A DNA stretch of 64,000 nucleotides from Phyllobates terribilis. Taxonomy: Eukaryota. The stretch covers positions 384,896,001 through 384,960,000 of the forward strand of contig NW_027362767.1 of NCBI RefSeq assembly GCF_046119375.1, read 5' to 3'. Made by a program: the position numbers and the translations under genes. How positions within the stretch are numbered: the stretch's first letter is position 1; each line of letters opens with the position of its first letter. The notes beneath the pieces were generated by a model. It saw nothing but the letters and a program-made list of their open reading frames with translations, ran no database searches and was not told the DNA's origin. This document shows, in pieces, positions 20,750-60,906 of the stretch.

Positions 20750-23514
20750 CTGGAAGCAGCAGAACATGGCAGCCATCAGTCCATTGTATGGACTACTCAG
20801 AAATACACAACTGCTCGCTGGAGAAGCTCAGGTTCTTTCAGCTTATTTATGACCTATGGACTCCAAGGAGGGATGTCCTGCACGACTAGGTCATCAGAAT
20901 CAGTCAGCAAAGGCAAATATTAGGTGGCCAAAACAAACACATTTTAGGTTTTGACATGTAATAGACCCAAGAATTTAAGGAGATTCGAGATCAACAGAAT
21001 TTGATATGCATACGTCCAGTTTTAGTAGTCTTGAGCGCTGTTACCACAAGTGCCCCCTGGATGGTCTAAAACACTACAGCGCCCTCTGCAGTAAGTGTTT
21101 GAGTGACAGCTGTACTGTGCTCCTGGTTGGATTCTGCTGTTATCGTTTAAGAGCAAATTCATAGAATTTCAGGATATTTGCGTACTCGCTCAGTAATGCC
21201 GCTACCCTACACAAATGCCGCTATCGCGCCTATGTAGTGCGCCCAGCAGTTTTGCACACACAGCAGATTTGCTGAGGATTTTCCATTACATATACACACT
21301 CAGAATTTGTTGAAGATCTTCTGTTATGGATTTCCCAATTTACTGTACACTGCAAAGAGATAAATCTGCTCTCAAAATCAGCAACAAAAATTGGCACAGT
21401 ATTAAAATCTGCACGGAAAATGACCAGCCACGTCTACTTAGCTGGTACTGCAACATGCTGCAGACTTTCTGCACATAAATCCGAAAGGAAATTAAAAAGA
21501 AACAAACAAAAAAAAAAAACACCTGAAAATACCCCATTAAATCATTGCTTTTTTTTTTTTTTTTATTTTTTTAGTCACTTTTTTTTTTGTCCTGTGTTGT
21601 TCATTGATGTTTTTTGCTCTAAATTCTTTAAGATGACACACCTGTTCATGAATTTTTTTGAATTAAATCAAATATGCTTTTAATTTTTGTCTTTAACCTT
21701 TTTAGAGAAAAAAAAAGTAGCATTTTCTATTAAAATATCTCATGCAACGCTAACATTTTTGCAAAAATTTTTTTCAGAAGTACAAAAATCACTTCAGGGT
21801 AGGGGGGATTGAAGTATATTTGGTAAAAATTTAGTGACTTTTTAAGAAGTTGCAATTGATGAATCGACTGAAAACATCAGGGAAACAAGACCAAACTCAC
21901 AATAGTGAATATGAAAAAAAACAAAAACACAGGAGAACACATACAACAGACTGCGAAAAAGGTGCAATTTAAAATAAAAATTTGGCACAAATAAAAAAAA
22001 ATACTGTCTTAAAACGCAAAAAACAGGCATAAATGCGATAATGAATCAGGGTCCTATGTGTGCAGGTGCCCTCAAGCTTCATTGCAGGAACCATTCAGGT
22101 GTGATTGTAGCGAATGGCTAATACATAGCCGGGTACGGTTGGTGAATTGGATTACATTGTGATCACGATAAGCAAATAGCAAAAAAATCCAATTTGGGTC
22201 ATATATTTGCAACTTGCTTGTTGCGGTACCGTAGTGGGGTCACAATACAACCCCATTCACTTGCTTTACTCTGTGATGTTGCAGCAGCCGAGAACAATCT
22301 TTTGTCGTGTAACTGTGTCATGGCCAAAGTCACTGTTCAGCTCCAGTGTAAGGGTCAGAGAAGCTGAGCTATGAACAGATGTTTGATGAGATCCTGACAT
22401 TGTAGACTTGAAATAGCTATTACTGAAAATCAAAATGGGCTTTCCGAGACCAAAAAAAGATCTGTATGACTCTAGTAGAGCAAACTAAAGCGATACCTCT
22501 ATGTCTCATCCTAGCATAAGGTCATCCAAATCAGCTGTGCAGTGTGTCAGACATCTCCCCATATCTCAGCTCCCTGTGATAATGAGGTATTTACAATAAT
22601 GACACCAAAAAATGTAATGCTTTCAATGGTGTTAGCCGAACTTTGCACACGTGACCTCAGACCTCATAGCTCAGTGCTATAAATCTGTCTCCCTGTATAT
22701 TCCCTTTGTCTTACCTGTGCCGTGGGATTGAATGAGATTGGGTGGTGATGCAAAGAATTGTGGGAAACTATTTAGCACAAGTTGGGGTAAAGTATGGAGC
22801 GGATCACCATGACCAGGAGCTATGTTCACAACAATGACTAATGCTGTATTAATTTCACCTTCTGAAAGTTCTAAGTGCCGGACTATCAGAATGTCTGCAC
22901 TACTGGATGTTAAGTTGTTTAGGCTGTGTTCACACCTGTGTTGTTACATCCTTTGTTCTTTTACATCAGCACAACAAAAATGCCGGAAGTGACTCACAAG
23001 TCATATAACAGACACCAATGGCACCCCCGGACCTAATGAATATAATAGGATGCAAAAGGTTCCTGCCAATTTTAATTTTTTTTTTTATATTTAGAGCTTA
23101 GTCCATGTATAGTTTCATGCACACTTTTTGCCCAATTCATTATTGCATTTGCACCTTTTTTGTCTAGTTTTTGGTGTGTGGTTTTTTTCTGCCTGTTTGT
23201 GCCTTTTTTTAAGTGTATTTTATACGTTTTTGCCTGTTTGTTTTTTTTATGTTCGGCATCATTTGTGTTTTTTTTCCAGATGTTTGCAACCGATTAATCA
23301 ATTACGACCCTTTAAAATATTACAATATTTTTTTGCGCAAATGTACTCCATTCCCCCTCTCCCTCGTCTCTAACCCTGATATTTTGGAACATACGACTTT
23401 TTGCACTTAATAGTCACAAATCAACAATTGGTTTTTTTTTTCAAGTCACTTTTCTTCTTCTCTTTTTTTTTTTTGCGCCAAATTATTCAGAATGAAGTCA
23501 GCTGACCATTCACG

Positions 23515-24420
23515 TCTCACTCCAGGGGTCCTTCCTTCACCCTGGGTCGCGGCTCGGCAACCGCCACAATGGAATCCAGAAGCAAGTATGAGACCCGGCG
23601 ATGGAGGGCCCAGTGCACTTCAGAGGTCTTTTTGTATAAAACTTCCATTTTATTGAAATAATTTTAAAAATGTGTAAAAAACACAGTTACAAGCAGTCAG
23701 ATCAACTAATGAACATCTAGAGCGACGCGTTTCGGCCTATAGCGAAGCCTTAGTCGTGATCTTACTTGAAAGGACACGAAAATATATATTTAAATGGCAG
23801 CAAGTCTTTGTCTTATTGTTATATTTACTCCCATTATATGGAGATCTTATTGTTTTTATCAATCCTTCTTTACACAAAAATTGCCTTGAAAATTGCAACT
23901 CGTATAGAATTTTTTTTTTCTTTTTTGGAAATTTGCATACATACTTGTATTACCCAAAAGGATTTGATTAATATAACACCAATTATATACAAAAAAAAAA
24001 TGATGTTAATAATATTTGTAGATAGCTCTTTATATCTGGCTACTTCATACAATACCATTTTGTATGTAATGCTGTATTATCATCTATTTATACTCTTACC
24101 GCTCTCTCTGGCTTCTTTTTATTGCTATGTACAGGTTCATACAGACCTGCACTTAACTTGTGCTTTTTATTTCCTAAGTAATACCGAGGGTTAATGATTG
24201 CATTGAAACCATTTATGTGCATGCTGGACATGGAAGGGTTAACCGCACAGCTGAATCTCTGCTGTTTCGATATGGACTTGTGACTTGCTGCCATTTAAAT
24301 ATATATCTTGATGTCCTTTCAAGTAAGATCATGACTAAGGCTTCACTATAGGCCGAAACGCGTCGCTCTAGATGTTCATTAGTTGATCTGACTGCTTGCA
24401 ACGGTGTTTTACACATTTTT
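23515..24420 (+). mobile_element. 5'-truncated Penelope-like retroelement remnant with inverted terminal repeats
   Basis: About 140-bp inverted repeat (23666-23806 vs 24282-24420) containing a hammerhead-like motif. AATAAA follows the left copy (23649-23654, minus strand). Weak P-x-GLN-like ORF tail near 24184. Confidence 0.65.
24325..24370 (+). ncRNA. Minimal type I hammerhead-ribozyme-like motif (A3:U8 variant); the inverted copy at 23718-23763 has U4>C
   Basis: agatc-ATGACTA-a-ggctt(cactat)aggcc-GAAA-cgcg-TC-gctct: core, stem II, GAAA, palindromic stem III, GUC triplet and an imperfect helix I. Confidence 0.55.
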
Positions 24421-27400
24421 TTTTGGTATTTGACCTGTTTTGGGAATTTTCAATGCCCAAAAAAAAAAAAATGTCATAACATTTAATACAGAACTTGAGT
24501 ACATTTGTGCAAAAATATTGTAAAAAAAAAATAAAAATAAAAAAATGCAATAATGAATGGGCTCTTGTCTGGTGGCCCCAAACTACTGACCTGGCTGCCA
24601 GACCAGGGCTCTTAAGAATCAATTTGCAAACGAGAAAGGAATAAAGGTAATAAGAAGAAATATTGGTCTAAACTTCTGCAATGTCATTATACAAGTGACC
24701 AGCAGGGGTCAGACTTGCATCAGTATAAGTAGAATTTCCGCCAATGACTCCTAGCTGAGGATGCTGAAAAATATTTGTAAAAGTTGCAAAATCGCATCAA
24801 ACTTATTTTCTGAGCTCCACCCAATACAAGATATTTTTTAAAACTATTTTTAAAGGGACTGTCCACCTTTGGGGATATTTTTTTTTCCTTACATAATTGC
24901 ATGTATTTTGGGAGAAAAATCCTTTTTGTTTTTCTGAAAAGTTTTTAACGTTTGCCTTCTACGTTGCATTATCTTTCACTGGCTGAAGGATGAGTTAACT
25001 AAGGATCCGTCAGTGAGCTCATTCTAACAATCCAATGGCAGAGTTTTTTTTAAGCTCTGCTCAGCTGATGTATGATCACAGACCACATCAAAGTTGAATG
25101 TGCAGTGAAACAAAGAGCCTGTAAAGGCCAGTCAGGATGTTTTGGGAAAGTCAGCAAGTTTGTAGGCAGACTCATCATTGGCAGGTATCTAATGAATTAA
25201 AGGGGTTTTTGAAGAACAAAGTCATAAAGTGACTGCATATTGCCAAATTAAAACAGAACGCAATACGCACACTGTCACAATTCCCCTGTACAAGTGGGCG
25301 ATCACATGCCGACTAGATTCTCATCTACGTCTCTCAATATTCCAATGAGAAAAGCTTAGGAGAATCTAGTTGACACGTGACCAGAACTATACATGACTGC
25401 CCATTTGCTCTGGGAATACAGAGGACTCATGACAGTGTTTACTGCACACAGTCACAATTCAGCAATTTGCCTTGAACCAAGAAAACCCCTTTAATGATTC
25501 CAATGACTAAGACAGGTTTATGATGCCTCCAGATTACACCACATTCTTACAGGGTAGTATAGACATGGCCTTACAGGCACTGCTCAATGCCTGATGCAGA
25601 AGTGAGCAGCGATGGACAACCCCTTTAACGGCTTTGCAGAGCTGTGATTAGGGCAGGCAACGGACGTCTGGACTGTAACTTCATGAAGCCGTTTGCTTTT
25701 TTGATTCTTCAGGTTCCCACATCTCTGCTTGCTGTCATTCATTACAACATTCCTGTTTACAAGTAGAAGCTTAAAGGGATATTCTGGCTGATTATTTCGG
25801 GGCCGGTGACATCACATCTACGTCCCAGTCTGTATCAATAGACACGCTGTCACCAGATCCACGCAGGTGCCATTACGGAAGTGAGCAAAGCCAGACCCTT
25901 GGAGTTGGAGCACAAGGTAAAACTAGAAGGACCCAATTTATTATTGCATTTGCGCTTTTTTTTTTTTGTCATCATTTTTTATGATTGAAATGGCAACAAA
26001 TGCCGTCAAATGATTGTCAGCCAATGTGTCTGTGTATGGTGGGTGTTTAGCCTCATTCCCTTCCATGGCACTTTGCTACAAAACCAAACAACCTATGGAG
26101 GATAGTGTGGCTTTTTCTTTAAAGGAGAGGACCATGTATTCCCAAACTTGGAGGAGGAGGTGGGGGAGAATTAACACACCCTTGACAAGTCTTACATGCA
26201 GATTTAGAACCCGATTTTCACTCATGGTGCAAAAATAAAAGAAAGTGATAAAATAGCCAACGACAATCTGGCAATAGCATTGCATGCTTAACTGGAATCA
26301 ACTATGTGGGCTCAGGACTTCGACTTATTACAAAGTTTACTTCCTAGAAACAGCACCACCCTTACCCATAGTTGGGGATTGGTACTGCAACTCTGTCCTT
26401 TTTATTTTTTCATGATTTCAGACAGCTCTCTCATAAAGGAAACTCTGGCCAGAACTGATATATTGCTATAACTAGACCATGTAAAGATGCGCCGCATTAA
26501 GAAGAATTATATTTATATATAAAAGAGGTACACTTTAAGAGTCTAAGTTTGGACCGTAAATCAGCCCCGATGTATCACTGCTGCTCGGAGTGTTCCTCTA
26601 ATCGCTGCCATCAATGAAAAGGAAAGATTTTTTTTTTTGTTAATCAAGAGAAAAAAAAAACAAAAAAAAAACCACAGTACTGAGTATTGTATGGTTTTCA
26701 TTTCAAATATCTAAAAAAAAAATAATATTTCAGAGATAAGAGACATTCACGAAATACAGCATGACGTTTAAAGGGTCAGTCCCAAGGACCATCAAATTTT
26801 TCCAATATGCTCCATATTTCTCATTTTTATTTCCTAAAAACATACCTACAAGCGTTACTTAGAAAGATGGACACCCCCCCCCCCCCCAAAAAAAAAAAGT
26901 ACATTCACAAGCTAAATTAAATAAACTAATAGAAAACATTTTTTTTTTGAACAGCACATGGGACTGCCCCTTTAAATGATACCTTTAAAAGAGCAAATTC
27001 ATCTTTTGCCAAATTAAAAGAATTTCAGTATTGCTCTTGAAATGGTAGAATTTAGTTGTTATCCCTCCGGACCCCACCCCCCCATAGGTGTGAGAGATTC
27101 CAGATGAATGGTACATTCCTTAAGATTGCAGAGGCGGGACTTATGTCTGACAACGCTCTCCACCAATGAGCTTGCTTGATTCATTGTACTAAATAAGTTG
27201 TCACAATGCTTCTGTATGGCCGTGCAAACGTGAAAAAAAAAAAAAAAAAAACTTAAAAAAAGGGATACAACCATTATACACAATTAAAAAAAAAAAAATT
27301 ATTGCTGTTGACCCGAAATTCCATTTAGTTTTTTTTCCATCTTTAAAAAGGGGGTGAAAGTGGGTCGTGGGAAATTTTAATACATTCAGCTATTGAAAAT

Positions 27401-28171: not shown

Positions 28172-49474
<21,303 letters not shown>

Positions 49475-58900: not shown

Positions 58901-60906
58901 CAATTGCCCTGTGCTGATATGTCTGAGGGGAATGTGAGGTGAAAACATGCAGCTGAGATCTCTGGTGCACACTGTGATGTGATTAGATGTCTGTGACCAT
59001 AATATTAAGATAGCAAATAGCTTATAAATAGGAAGCCATTGTTGCCTATCAACAGCGCAGCATTGTCTATTATATACGTATAAGAACGGGAAATGCCTGT
59101 AAAAATGTTGCAATTGCGTCACATTTCACTTTGCGTTATTCAATAATAATGATATATCTGTCAGGACAGAGTCACAGAGTCACACGTAGCGGCTGTTGCT
59201 GCAGGGTCAATGCTTATCTATGGGCGACCCAGTGGTCCCCTCCTCGCTTTCAATTTTTCCTCCTCGCCTTCCAAGAGCTAAAACTTTGTTTTATTTTTGT
59301 TTTGATAAGAGTTATATGAGGGTTTTATCTTATTTTTATTTTTTTTGTGGGGAGAGTTGTAGTTTTTATTGGGCTCTGTACGACTTTTTTTATTTCTTTT
59401 TATTCCATTTTTTGGGGAAGTGAAAAATTAAAAAAATAGTGATTTAACCATTTCAATGCTTTGTTTTTTTGGCGGTCACCGTATGAGATAAATATTTAAA
59501 AATTGTATTATTTTGGATAGTTATCCATGCAGGGATACCGCAAACGTTATTTTTTTTATATATATATATTAATAAGATTCTGGAAAATTAGGGTGCCTCA
59601 ACTTTTTTTCAAGTTTTTTTCTTTCTTTTTTCATTGTCTTTTATACTGTTTTTTTGTTCTCTCAGAGTCCCAGGAGACTTGAAATAGCAATAAATGGATC
59701 ACTTTTACGATACATAGAAATACTGTAATATTGAAGAGTATTATAAGATTGCTGAGCTTTTTAAGTGTACAAACATGGCAGTAGGCCCCTGGTGGCCATG
59801 ACGTTGCCATCAGCACTCCATTTCCACCCTCTTCAGTGGGGTACAATAGAGTTAAATGGAGCTAGCTCTGATCACAGCAATTACACTATGGTCACACAAT
59901 GAGTTTTTGGTTGCGTTTTTTACCCTGAGTATTTTAAAAAAAAATTCAAGTAACCTATTTTACTTAATGGGTGTGGAAAATCTGCAACATCAAAACCTCA
60001 CCAAAAGCCAAAGTTTCCAAGAGGAAGACGCTTTAGGAAAATGTTGAAGTGTCTTTTTGGTGTTTTTTGTGCCGTTTCTTGCAGTGTCTTTGCCACTGGC
60101 GTTTATTTAATTTTTTTACATTATAACTATATAGTGAGCAGCTTCCTCTTAATCCACTTGAAGAATGAAGCGGTCACTTCTTGTAACCGCTTTGCAGTTT
60201 TCGAAGCCTGAAGCGGTTAAAAAAAAAGTTCACAAAGACTGAACAAAGTTTTGACTTTGCAGTGCACCGTTTATTTTAACATTTTTTATGCACTTTTGCA
60301 GGCGGGTTTCAGAGTGAAAAAGACAACGTGTCAGAAACTGAGTGACCTCAGCATATATACCAGGAACCTATATGTGTATTACAGCCGCAGGATTGCGCAG
60401 GCAAGTGACCGCTCCCATACTACCCTATTATTGTAATAGTACACCTCCTGCCCTAAGGGACAGGCTCTTAAAGGTTTTTTTTGGGGGGATTCCGAAAACC
60501 CATCTTCCGCGGCTGCAGTTTGTTTTAGAAAAGCAAACTGTACTTTGTTCACCGTCTCCTGGCCCAGCACTGAGTTTCCGCCGCTGCTGCTGAAATCAGT
60601 GAGCCAATAAGTAGACGGAATAAGCCTCTCAGAGACGCTGAGATCATTGATTGACGTAACGTCATTGCCAGACACAGGAATCTGTGTCGGTTACTCAGCG
60701 CTTGACCTGGGGAGGATGAGCAAAGATCCGTTGTTTTTTCTAAAGATTTCCGATTCCGAAAGAAAGCTCTTAAGACTACGTTCTTACGACGAGCTTTTTG
60801 GTGAGTTTTTTATGTTGCAGATTTTCTGCAGCATTTCTGCACCCATTAAGTAAGATAGGTTATTTGCATTTTTTTCAAAAATACGCAGCGTCAAAAACTC
60901 ACCTAA

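What the first reader, a model, noticed from the sequence alone, without database searches (positions are those of the whole stretch)
23666..24420. Penelope-like inverted repeat with a hammerhead-ribozyme motif carrying a compensatory A3:U8 core pair
Seen: two inverted arms of about 140 bp, about 475 bp apart. The plus-strand arm reads agatc-A3 U4 G5 A6 C7 U8 A9-a-stem II (GGCUU/AGGCC)-GAAA-CGCG-UC-gcucu. This is type I hammerhead topology with a GUC cleavage triplet (C at 24364), a 2-bp palindromic helix III (ACGCGU) and an imperfect helix I. The canonical C3 and G8 are both changed, to A and U, which preserves the Watson-Crick pair. The minus-strand arm has U4>C. Established: Penelope-like elements carry minimal hammerheads in their terminal repeats, which often work as dimers via the palindromic helix III; C3:G8 is a tertiary pair that tolerates compensatory swaps at reduced rate; inverted terminal repeats are typical of PLE insertions. 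Inference: a variant ribozyme family. In one transcript the antisense arm could base-pair with and silence the ribozyme, and any read-through from AKT2 toward CCNP would cross it.
Basis: partly seen in the sequence, partly recalled or inferred. Interest (0 to 1): 0.72.

Follow-up and report, generated by a model that had tools for sequence, protein, structure and literature searches.

The report
Frog hammerhead-type repeat, inverted pair
Two partial copies of a frog jumping-gene repeat lie head to head downstream of AKT2; each carries a small self-cleaving-RNA (hammerhead) motif with an unusual but pair-preserving A3:U8 core swap, and at this site they most likely act only as an RNA hairpin and not as working ribozymes.

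Summary
Arms 23666-23806 and 24282-24420 are 92-94% inverted copies, 475 nt apart. The right arm carries a complete minimal type I hammerhead layout (24331-24364, + strand) with A3 and U8 in place of C3 and G8. The left arm has the same motif with U4 changed to C.

A descriptor built from published Penelope mini-hammerhead features, leaving positions 3 and 8 free, hit once in the window and never in 1,917 shuffles. Rfam's hammerhead models see nothing.

Contigs from the same frog and two other organisms show a repeat family. U4 is the family state. No well-supported variant appeared at positions 3 or 8. Other copies run on across both arm boundaries, so this is two partial copies, 3' ends outward, and not one transposon with terminal repeats.

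The link to a Penelope ORF could not be tested.

At this site the left motif is dead. The right one has no tandem partner, and a rival hairpin is predicted to hide its cleavage site. AKT2 is on the minus strand and ends 3.8 kb upstream. Read-through RNA is predicted to fold into a ~133-bp hairpin, and one probable RNA run hints at A-to-I editing.

The scan met this A3:U8 frog motif before on other DNA.

The parts
23666..23806 (-). Left arm: a short partial copy of the repeat. Its sense strand is the minus strand, and its 3' end points left (outward).
   Evidence: Other organisms' contigs run across its outer end into the flank repeat (X17 records 11 and 12, X18 record 20).
23724..23757 (-). 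Left hammerhead-like motif with U4 changed to C (window 23756 = G). It is presumed inactive.
   Evidence: Every other contig laid here, in three organisms, reads A at 23756, which is U4 on the motif strand. C4 is therefore private to this copy.
23807..24281 (+). Spacer. Its right part, from at least 24154, belongs to the longer right-hand copy. 23791-23922 looks single copy.
   Evidence: X1 records 3, 4, 6 and 7 run from 24154-24246 into the arm with 11-13% differences. The depth profile agrees. The 142-aa ORF at 23766-24194 matches no Pfam family.
24282..24420 (+). Right arm: the 3' part of a longer copy. Its sense strand is the plus strand, and its 3' end points right (outward).
24331..24364 (+). 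Minimal type I hammerhead layout with an A3:U8 core pair. The presumed cleavage site is after C 24364.
   Evidence: Sequence read directly. Descriptor: one hit versus none in 1,917 shuffles. Rfam finds no hit, even on 76 nt alone at E up to 10.
23478..23657 (-). Flank repeat F: a GC-rich repeated block abutting the left arm's outer end. On the minus strand it ends in AATAAT plus A13. Its relation to the hammerhead repeat is unresolved.
   Evidence: One search shows depth of 220-620 and the F-to-arm junction in other organisms. X18 record 17 joins F to the motif in the other orientation. Its ORFs match no Pfam family and have no credible relative among 1.84 billion representatives.
28172..28210 (-). 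Context: the end of the AKT2 coding sequence ([12 protein letters not shown], then stop) on the minus strand, 3.75 kb upstream of the repeat in the direction of transcription.

Best explanation
This is a head-to-head pair of partial copies of one hammerhead-bearing retroelement repeat, of the kind carried in Penelope-like element terminal repeats and their non-autonomous derivatives. Both 3' ends point outward.

The two copies came from one source. The left copy is cut short at its 5' end, the right copy runs further 5', and the 141-nt 'arms' are simply their overlap.

The family's hammerhead module carries A3:U8 as an inherited state. It is a pair-preserving variant of the C3:G8 core pair.

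At this locus the ribozymes most likely do nothing. The left one has lost invariant U4. The right one has a helix III that cannot close on its own, no tandem partner for the dimer form, a weak helix I, and a competing hairpin over the cleavage site.

What the pair does do is make minus-strand RNA running on from AKT2 fold into a ~133-bp double-stranded hairpin. That hairpin is probably a substrate for A-to-I editing.

Shown: the repeat, the motif anatomy, family membership, the state of U4, the AKT2 strand, and the predicted fold. Inferred: the Penelope origin, the two-strand insertion mechanism, and the editing.
For: - The repeat and the motif are confirmed.
- The motif is beyond chance for the window: one hit versus none in 1,917 shuffles.
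- Three features that were not in the published search descriptor but are typical of Penelope mini-hammerheads are present: a nucleotide between 9 and 10.1, G10.1-C11.1, and palindromic 15.2-16.2 (PMC4209133).
- The same paper reports about 9,000 such motifs in Xenopus tropicalis, and pairs on opposite strands 100-700 bp apart.
- Family: 104 contigs of the same organism, and 35 and 37 of two others, lie on the stretch at 80% likeness or more.
- Both arms share GCT at 24287-89 where most other copies read ATA. The arms are therefore each other's closest kin.
- Other copies cross the inner boundary of the right arm and the outer boundary of the left arm.
- A purified Penelope-like protein cuts and extends both DNA strands (PMC11167929). 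That would give exactly this arrangement, with tails outward.
- AKT2 is on the minus strand.
- The hairpin fold has 133 arm-to-arm pairs at -312 kcal/mol.
- Eight small runs of two studies (117-205 million letters each) hold a quarter to over half of this locus's sampled words. I infer these are RNA runs.
- In one of them, 11 of 16 listed changes are T>C, against 8 of 78 in the DNA run.
Against: - No Rfam hammerhead model matches.
- No RT or GIY-YIG ORF lies nearby.
- The only ORF next to the arm has no credible relatives.
- 3/8 covariation could not be counted, because only summary tables of other copies were available and 96 rows of differences were hidden.
- No clear target-site duplication was found.
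- The right copy ends at the arm boundary while other copies continue into repeat F. A simple model with a fixed 3' end does not explain this.
- The editing hint rests on counts of change types in contigs of a run whose RNA nature is a guess.
Confidence: 0.6

Rival explanations
1. The right-arm motif, and the family it stands for, is a working variant ribozyme. A3:U8 replaces C3:G8 and the RNA cleaves after C 24364, as a dimer through the ACGCGU palindrome or with help from the element's protein.
For: - Every other core position is canonical, and the 3:8 pair stays Watson-Crick.
- U3:A8 occurs naturally, and ribozymes with covarying 3/8 nucleotides had been shown active in vitro (PMC3088659; PMC4209133).
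- The C3G/G8C double mutant partly restores cleavage in a Penelope-like hammerhead (PMC11167929).
- A3 and U8 are shared by both arms and show no well-supported variants in other copies.
Against: - There is no tandem partner at this locus.
- The hammerhead fold scores -4.5 against -10.1 kcal/mol for a fold that hides the cleavage site. The two-strand fold does not use the ACGCGU helix.
- Helix I has a mismatch at its second pair.
- The motif is no better conserved between the arms than the rest: 2 of 34 positions differ, against about 7 of 107.
- Eight of nine Xenopus dimer elements tested in vitro did not cleave (preprint 10.64898/2026.07.22.740005).
- Penelope mini-hammerheads cleave poorly even with canonical cores.
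Confidence: 0.12
2. It is a non-autonomous DNA transposon (a MITE or foldback element) with 140-bp terminal inverted repeats, and the hammerhead resemblance is chance.
For: - Both ends of the inverted repeat are sharp.
- The total size of 755 bp and the AT-rich interior suit a MITE.
- Rfam sees no hammerhead.
- By my rough estimate, tens of chance motif hits are expected per genome.
Against: - Other copies run across the inner edge of the right arm and the outer edge of the left arm.
- The left part of the spacer is single copy, while the arms and the right part are repeated.
- No target-site duplication beyond a run of T was seen.
- The motif shows three Penelope-specific extras.
Confidence: 0.08
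3. A single copy of the repeat was inserted, and a later local inverted duplication (replication or repair slip) made the second arm. The pairing of arms would then say nothing about the insertion mechanism.
For: The arms are each other's closest kin (shared GCT at 24287-89). The inverted repeat has sharp ends on both sides.
Against: - The left arm continues outward into repeat F exactly as other copies do in other organisms. A local duplicate of the right arm would not do this.
- Earlier first-stage notes list many such inverted pairs in this genome. These are unchecked leads.
Confidence: 0.12

Closest known systems
Minimal type I hammerheads of Penelope-like element terminal repeats (Cervera and de la Pena 2014, PMC4209133)
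   Same: Both share the core boxes, the extra nucleotide between 9 and 10.1, G10.1-C11.1, and a palindromic 15.2-16.2 that needs a second copy to build helix III. Both are abundant in Xenopus, and both occur as pairs on opposite strands 100-700 bp apart.
   Different: The core pair here is A3:U8. The published descriptors used C3:G8 and later U3:A8, so this family would have been missed. No element ORF is at hand here.
Natural U3:A8 hammerhead covariants (Perreault et al. 2011, PMC3088659; Cercyon element of Schistosoma, PMC4209133)
   Same: Both swap the C3:G8 tertiary pair for another Watson-Crick pair that is fixed in a family.
   Different: The orientation of the A-U pair is reversed. A literal search of the held papers for 'A3-U8' with 'hammerhead' found none. 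That is a weak sign that it is undescribed.
Non-LTR retrozymes of Xenopus and other vertebrates (PMC7229834; preprint 10.64898/2026.07.22.740005)
   Same: Both are hammerhead-bearing non-coding repeats related to Penelope terminal repeats. Retrozymes have many dispersed single copies, and most tested Xenopus dimers were inactive in vitro.
   Different: Retrozymes are defined by tandem units. There is no tandem array here.
Poseidon element of Anolis, studied in vitro (Frangieh et al. 2024, PMC11167929)
   Same: The protein cuts and extends both target strands, and reverse transcription starts at fixed internal sites. This gives defined 3' ends, as seen in the arms' common outer boundary next to a small GUGU/ACAC stem-loop.
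   Different: In Poseidon the ORF starts inside the hammerhead. Here the AUG formed by A3-U4-G5 opens only six codons.
Inverted repeat pairs in 3' UTRs and downstream transcripts that form ADAR-edited hairpins (general knowledge)
   Same: Both form a long, near-perfect intramolecular duplex. A T>C bias was seen in a probable RNA run.
   Different: Editing is not shown site by site here, and no matched DNA was compared.

Membership tests
Hammerhead ribozyme, minimal type I (Penelope type) | Invariant core: U4 G5 A6, A9, G12 A13 A14, A15.1-U16.1, H17 | tested here: met
   All are present in the right arm, 24331-24364. The left arm fails at position 4, which is C.
Hammerhead ribozyme, minimal type I (Penelope type) | C3:G8 pair or a documented covariant | tested here: inconclusive
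   A3:U8 is Watson-Crick, but it is neither C:G nor the reported U:A. Family-wide covariation could not be counted.
Hammerhead ribozyme, minimal type I (Penelope type) | Extra nucleotide between 9 and 10.1, G10.1-C11.1, palindromic 15.2-16.2 | tested here: met
   A 24338; G 24339 paired with C 24354; ACGCGU at 24358-63. The features are as listed in PMC4209133.
Hammerhead ribozyme, minimal type I (Penelope type) | Helix I able to form and the hammerhead fold competitive | tested here: inconclusive
   4 of 5 pairs form. The hammerhead fold scores -4.5 against an MFE of -10.1 kcal/mol, with a rival hairpin at 24360-64/24371-75.
Hammerhead ribozyme (Rfam models) | Score at or above the gathering threshold of an Rfam hammerhead model | tested here: not met
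   No hammerhead hit at E up to 10, on 1.5 kb or on 76 nt. No positive control with a canonical Penelope mini-hammerhead was possible.
Hammerhead ribozyme | Site-specific self-cleavage | not testable with these tools
   Only contigs were available, and these cannot show RNA ends.
Penelope-like element | Family linked to an ORF with RT and GIY-YIG domains | tested here: inconclusive
   No such ORF lies near the locus. The ORF after the left arm has no credible relative.
Penelope-like element | Hammerhead in the terminal repeat; inverted 5'-truncated partner copy with 3' ends outward | tested here: met
   Orientation comes from the motif strands. The unequal 5' extents come from other copies' contigs.
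MITE or other DNA transposon with terminal inverted repeats | The whole unit repeated as one piece, bounded by the arms and flanked by target-site duplications | tested here: not met
   Other copies cross both arm boundaries, part of the spacer is single copy, and no duplication is seen.
Non-LTR retrozyme | Tandem head-to-tail units, each with a hammerhead | tested here: not met
   There is no tandem array in 22500-25500 and no further copy in the window.

The most novel reading that the evidence does not exclude
A lineage of frog Penelope-type repeats has fixed A3:U8 as a working hammerhead core. It would be the first natural A:U pair in this orientation at the catalytic 3:8 position, active in tandem copies or with the element's protein. 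It would also have been invisible to every published hammerhead descriptor and to Rfam. A smaller side reading is that the inverted pair is an edited double-stranded element in AKT2 downstream RNA.
Probability: 0.2. Interest if true: 0.6.

Novelty: new variant of a known kind. Interest (0 to 1): 0.4.

Why it matters
If A3:U8 hammerheads cleave, then counts of hammerheads in amphibian genomes, which rest on CUGANGA-type descriptors, miss whole families. The 3:8 pair would also be shown in nature to tolerate both A-U orientations.

For this locus the practical point is smaller. A long inverted repeat sits in the path of AKT2 transcription and can make double-stranded RNA. As a single site it is an ordinary decayed repeat pair, and the scan has already met the same core variant elsewhere in this genome.

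Tried and rejected
- **Rfam:** at a permissive threshold, on 1.5 kb and on 76 nt, it gave no hammerhead. The few weak snoRNA and miRNA hits fall in A/T-rich flank and are chance.
- **Larger enclosing inverted repeat:** only short low-complexity matches were found.
- **Other copies in the window:** none.
- **Exact-pattern scans** with positions 3, 7 and 8 free, in metagenome (twice), viral and prokaryote genome collections: all blank, as expected for frog DNA.
- **Pfam:** no family for the 142-aa spacer ORF or the three small ORFs of the flank repeat.
- **Search of 1.84 billion representatives** with the 43-aa ORF that follows the left arm: one weak hit (E 8e-6) to a repetitive 727-aa protein with a scatter of unrelated Pfam matches. 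I judged it spurious.
- **tRNA scan** of the flank repeat: nothing.
- **Relaxed motif scan** (one core mismatch, fewer rules): two further hits, at 60740 and 37344. By eye these are low-complexity chance matches.
- **Papers:** Lunse et al. 2017 and Przybilski and Hammann 2007 are not held. What I say about A3:U8 activity in mutant studies is therefore only recollection, and nothing rests on it. The preprint's held supplement is an oligo order form.
- **Bacterial promoter and terminator scan:** irrelevant here.

Full report
**Observation.** The inverted repeat is real. The repeat finder reports arms 23666-23806 and 24282-24422, 141 nt, 92% complementary, 475 nt apart. Gapped blastn gives 93.6% identity, with the right arm ending at 24420. 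A global alignment of the two sides shows that homology stops sharply at both the inner and outer ends. There is no further copy in the 64-kb window and no tandem array nearby.

**Motif anatomy.**
- A3 24331, U4, G5, A6, C7, U8 24336, A9, then one extra A.
- Helix II is GGCUU paired with AGGCC, with a six-base loop.
- G12 A13 A14 A15.1 follow, then CGCG, U16.1 and C17 at 24364.
- Helix I pairs at four of its first five positions.

The left arm has the same motif on the minus strand (23757 to 23724), with C at position 4 and one loop change.

**Is it more than chance?** I wrote a descriptor from the generic core plus three features that Cervera and de la Pena listed as emerging in Penelope mini-hammerheads. 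These are a nucleotide between 9 and 10.1, G10.1-C11.1, and palindromic 15.2-16.2 (PMC4209133). Positions 3 and 8 were left free. The descriptor finds this one site in the window and nothing in 300 plus 1,617 dinucleotide-preserving shuffles on both strands.

My rough calculation puts chance at about 1e-3 per window, which is tens of sites per genome. The motif alone is therefore suggestive, not conclusive. Rfam's models give no hammerhead match even when only 76 nt are searched at E up to 10. I had no canonical Penelope mini-hammerhead to use as a positive control.

**The family.** Only Logan contigs were available. At 80% likeness, 104 contigs of the same organism lie on 23560-24520, as do 35 and 37 contigs of two other organisms. 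Four results matter:

- At 23756 every other contig, in all three organisms, reads A. U4 is therefore the family state, and the left arm's C4 is a private change.
- No well-supported difference is listed at 24331 or 24336, or at their left-arm counterparts. However, 96 less-supported rows are hidden, so this is weak evidence that A3 and U8 are the family state. Both arms, which are about 7% apart, do share them.
- Both arms share GCT at 24287-89 where most other copies read ATA. The two arms are therefore each other's closest relatives and come from one source.
- Other copies run without a break from 24154-24246 into the right arm (X1 records 3, 4, 6, 7). They also run from the left arm outward into the left flank (X17 records 11 and 12, X18 record 20). 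Meanwhile 23791-23922 has single-copy depth.

The arms are therefore the overlap of two partial copies of a longer unit, with the 3' ends of the motif-sense strands pointing outward. They are not the terminal repeats of a single transposon. I see no target-site duplication beyond a run of T.

**Mechanism of origin (inferred).** Penelope-like elements often carry an inverted, 5'-truncated partner copy. A purified Poseidon protein cuts and extends both target strands, and starts reverse transcription at fixed internal sites of the RNA (PMC11167929). That would produce two copies head to head with defined outer ends and unequal inner ends, as seen here. The arms end at a small GUGU/ACAC stem-loop.

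One point is unexplained. The left copy continues into a GC-rich repeat, F (23478-23657). F ends in AATAAT plus A13 on the minus strand. The same junction recurs in other organisms, and one contig joins F to the motif in the other orientation (X18 record 17). F may be part of the element, or it may be a preferred target.

**Link to a Penelope ORF.**
- No RT or GIY-YIG ORF is near the locus. The only long ORF in the spacer (142 aa) and three small ORFs in F match no Pfam family.
- The 43-aa ORF that starts 18 nt beyond the left arm's outer end was searched against 1.84 billion representatives. It gave one weak hit to a repetitive protein, which I judge spurious.
- Pattern scans of the public collections were blank.

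The Penelope assignment therefore rests on motif features and on the literature, not on a tested ORF link.

**Can the ribozymes work here?**
- The left motif lacks invariant U4.
- In the right motif, helix III (A15.1-U16.1 and C-G closing a two-base loop) cannot form in one molecule. It needs a second sense copy, and none is present.
- ViennaRNA puts the hammerhead fold at -4.5 kcal/mol against -10.1 for a fold in which 24360-64 pairs with 24371-75 and hides the cleavage site. The two-strand fold prefers other pairings to the ACGCGU helix.
- The motif is no better conserved between the arms than the rest of the arm.
- In the literature, Penelope mini-hammerheads cleave poorly even with canonical cores. 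Eight of nine Xenopus dimer elements did not cleave. The Poseidon hammerhead cleaved only with protein and was not needed for insertion.

**What the pair does do.** AKT2 lies on the minus strand, and its stop codon is at 28174-28172. The repeat therefore lies 3.75-4.5 kb downstream in the direction of AKT2 transcription.

Minus-strand RNA carries the dead left motif in sense and the intact right motif in antisense. This is the opposite of what a working ribozyme in AKT2 read-through would need. RNA spanning 23640-24440 is predicted to fold with 133 arm-to-arm pairs at -312 kcal/mol.

Eight small runs from two studies (117-205 million letters each) hold a quarter to over half of the sampled words of this single-copy locus. 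That is hard to explain unless they are RNA runs; this is my inference. In the one such run that was laid, a 463-nt contig matches the spacer exactly. A contig over 24306-24520 carries 12 differences. Of that run's 16 listed changes, 11 are T>C, against 8 of 78 in the DNA run. T>C on the plus strand is A>G on minus-strand RNA, which is the signature of A-to-I editing of a hairpin. The positions were not shown and there is no matched DNA, so this is only a hint.

**Comparison with what is known.** Natural U3:A8 covariants are published (PMC3088659; PMC4209133). A literal search for 'A3-U8' with 'hammerhead' found no paper in the held library. That is weak evidence that this orientation is undescribed. 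Published descriptors fix C3/G8 or U3/A8, so they would miss this family.

**Earlier notes of this scan.** The scan found the same A3:U8 frog motif before on other DNA (s1-204952, s1-217972, s1-196776), and follow-up agents read it as a state inherited by a Penelope-type family. My results agree as far as they go, but they are not independent proof of family-wide covariation. The statement that the genome is a frog's comes from those notes.

**Verdict.** This locus is an ordinary decayed pair of partial copies of a known kind of repeat. The A3:U8 core is a new variant of that known kind, and its activity is untested. Interest is moderate.

Noticed in passing
window 23478-23657: A GC-rich (about 60%) repeated block, F, abuts the left arm. 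On the minus strand it ends in AATAAT plus A13. Its summed contig depth is 220-620 in three organisms. The junction with the hammerhead repeat recurs in other organisms, once in the opposite orientation. F could be part of the element, a SINE-like unit or a preferred insertion target.
   Followed up: partly
window 24306-24520 (run X4, record 28): A contig of a probable RNA run carries 12 differences over the right arm and flank. In that run, 11 of 16 listed changes are T>C. This would fit A-to-I editing of minus-strand hairpin RNA. The positions were not shown.
   Followed up: partly
window 24331-24351: A3-U4-G5 of the variant core spells AUG, which opens a six-codon frame ending in loop II. 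In the Anolis Poseidon element the ORF starts just inside the hammerhead, so the A3 change creates a start codon close to that position.
   Followed up: no
window 23328-23348 (-), 23468-23488 (-), 24497-24518 (+): A short motif, roughly GAGTACATTTGCGC followed by a run of A, occurs three times around the locus. It looks like the 3' end of some poly(A)-tailed retroposon family.
   Followed up: no
window 23666-23806 and 24282-24422: CpG observed/expected is about 1.36 and 0.97 in the two arms, which seems high for a dispersed vertebrate repeat. Four CpGs in the 3' half of the motif are intact in both arms, although some other copies have lost them.
   Followed up: no
window 40076-40549 (-): This ORF matches the DDE_3 transposase domain (Pfam E 5.9e-12). 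It is a fragment of a Tc1/mariner-type transposase, unrelated to the finding.
   Followed up: no
window 60740-60771 (+) and 37312-37344 (-): These two sites pass a relaxed hammerhead scan with one core mismatch. By eye both are low-complexity chance matches.
   Followed up: yes
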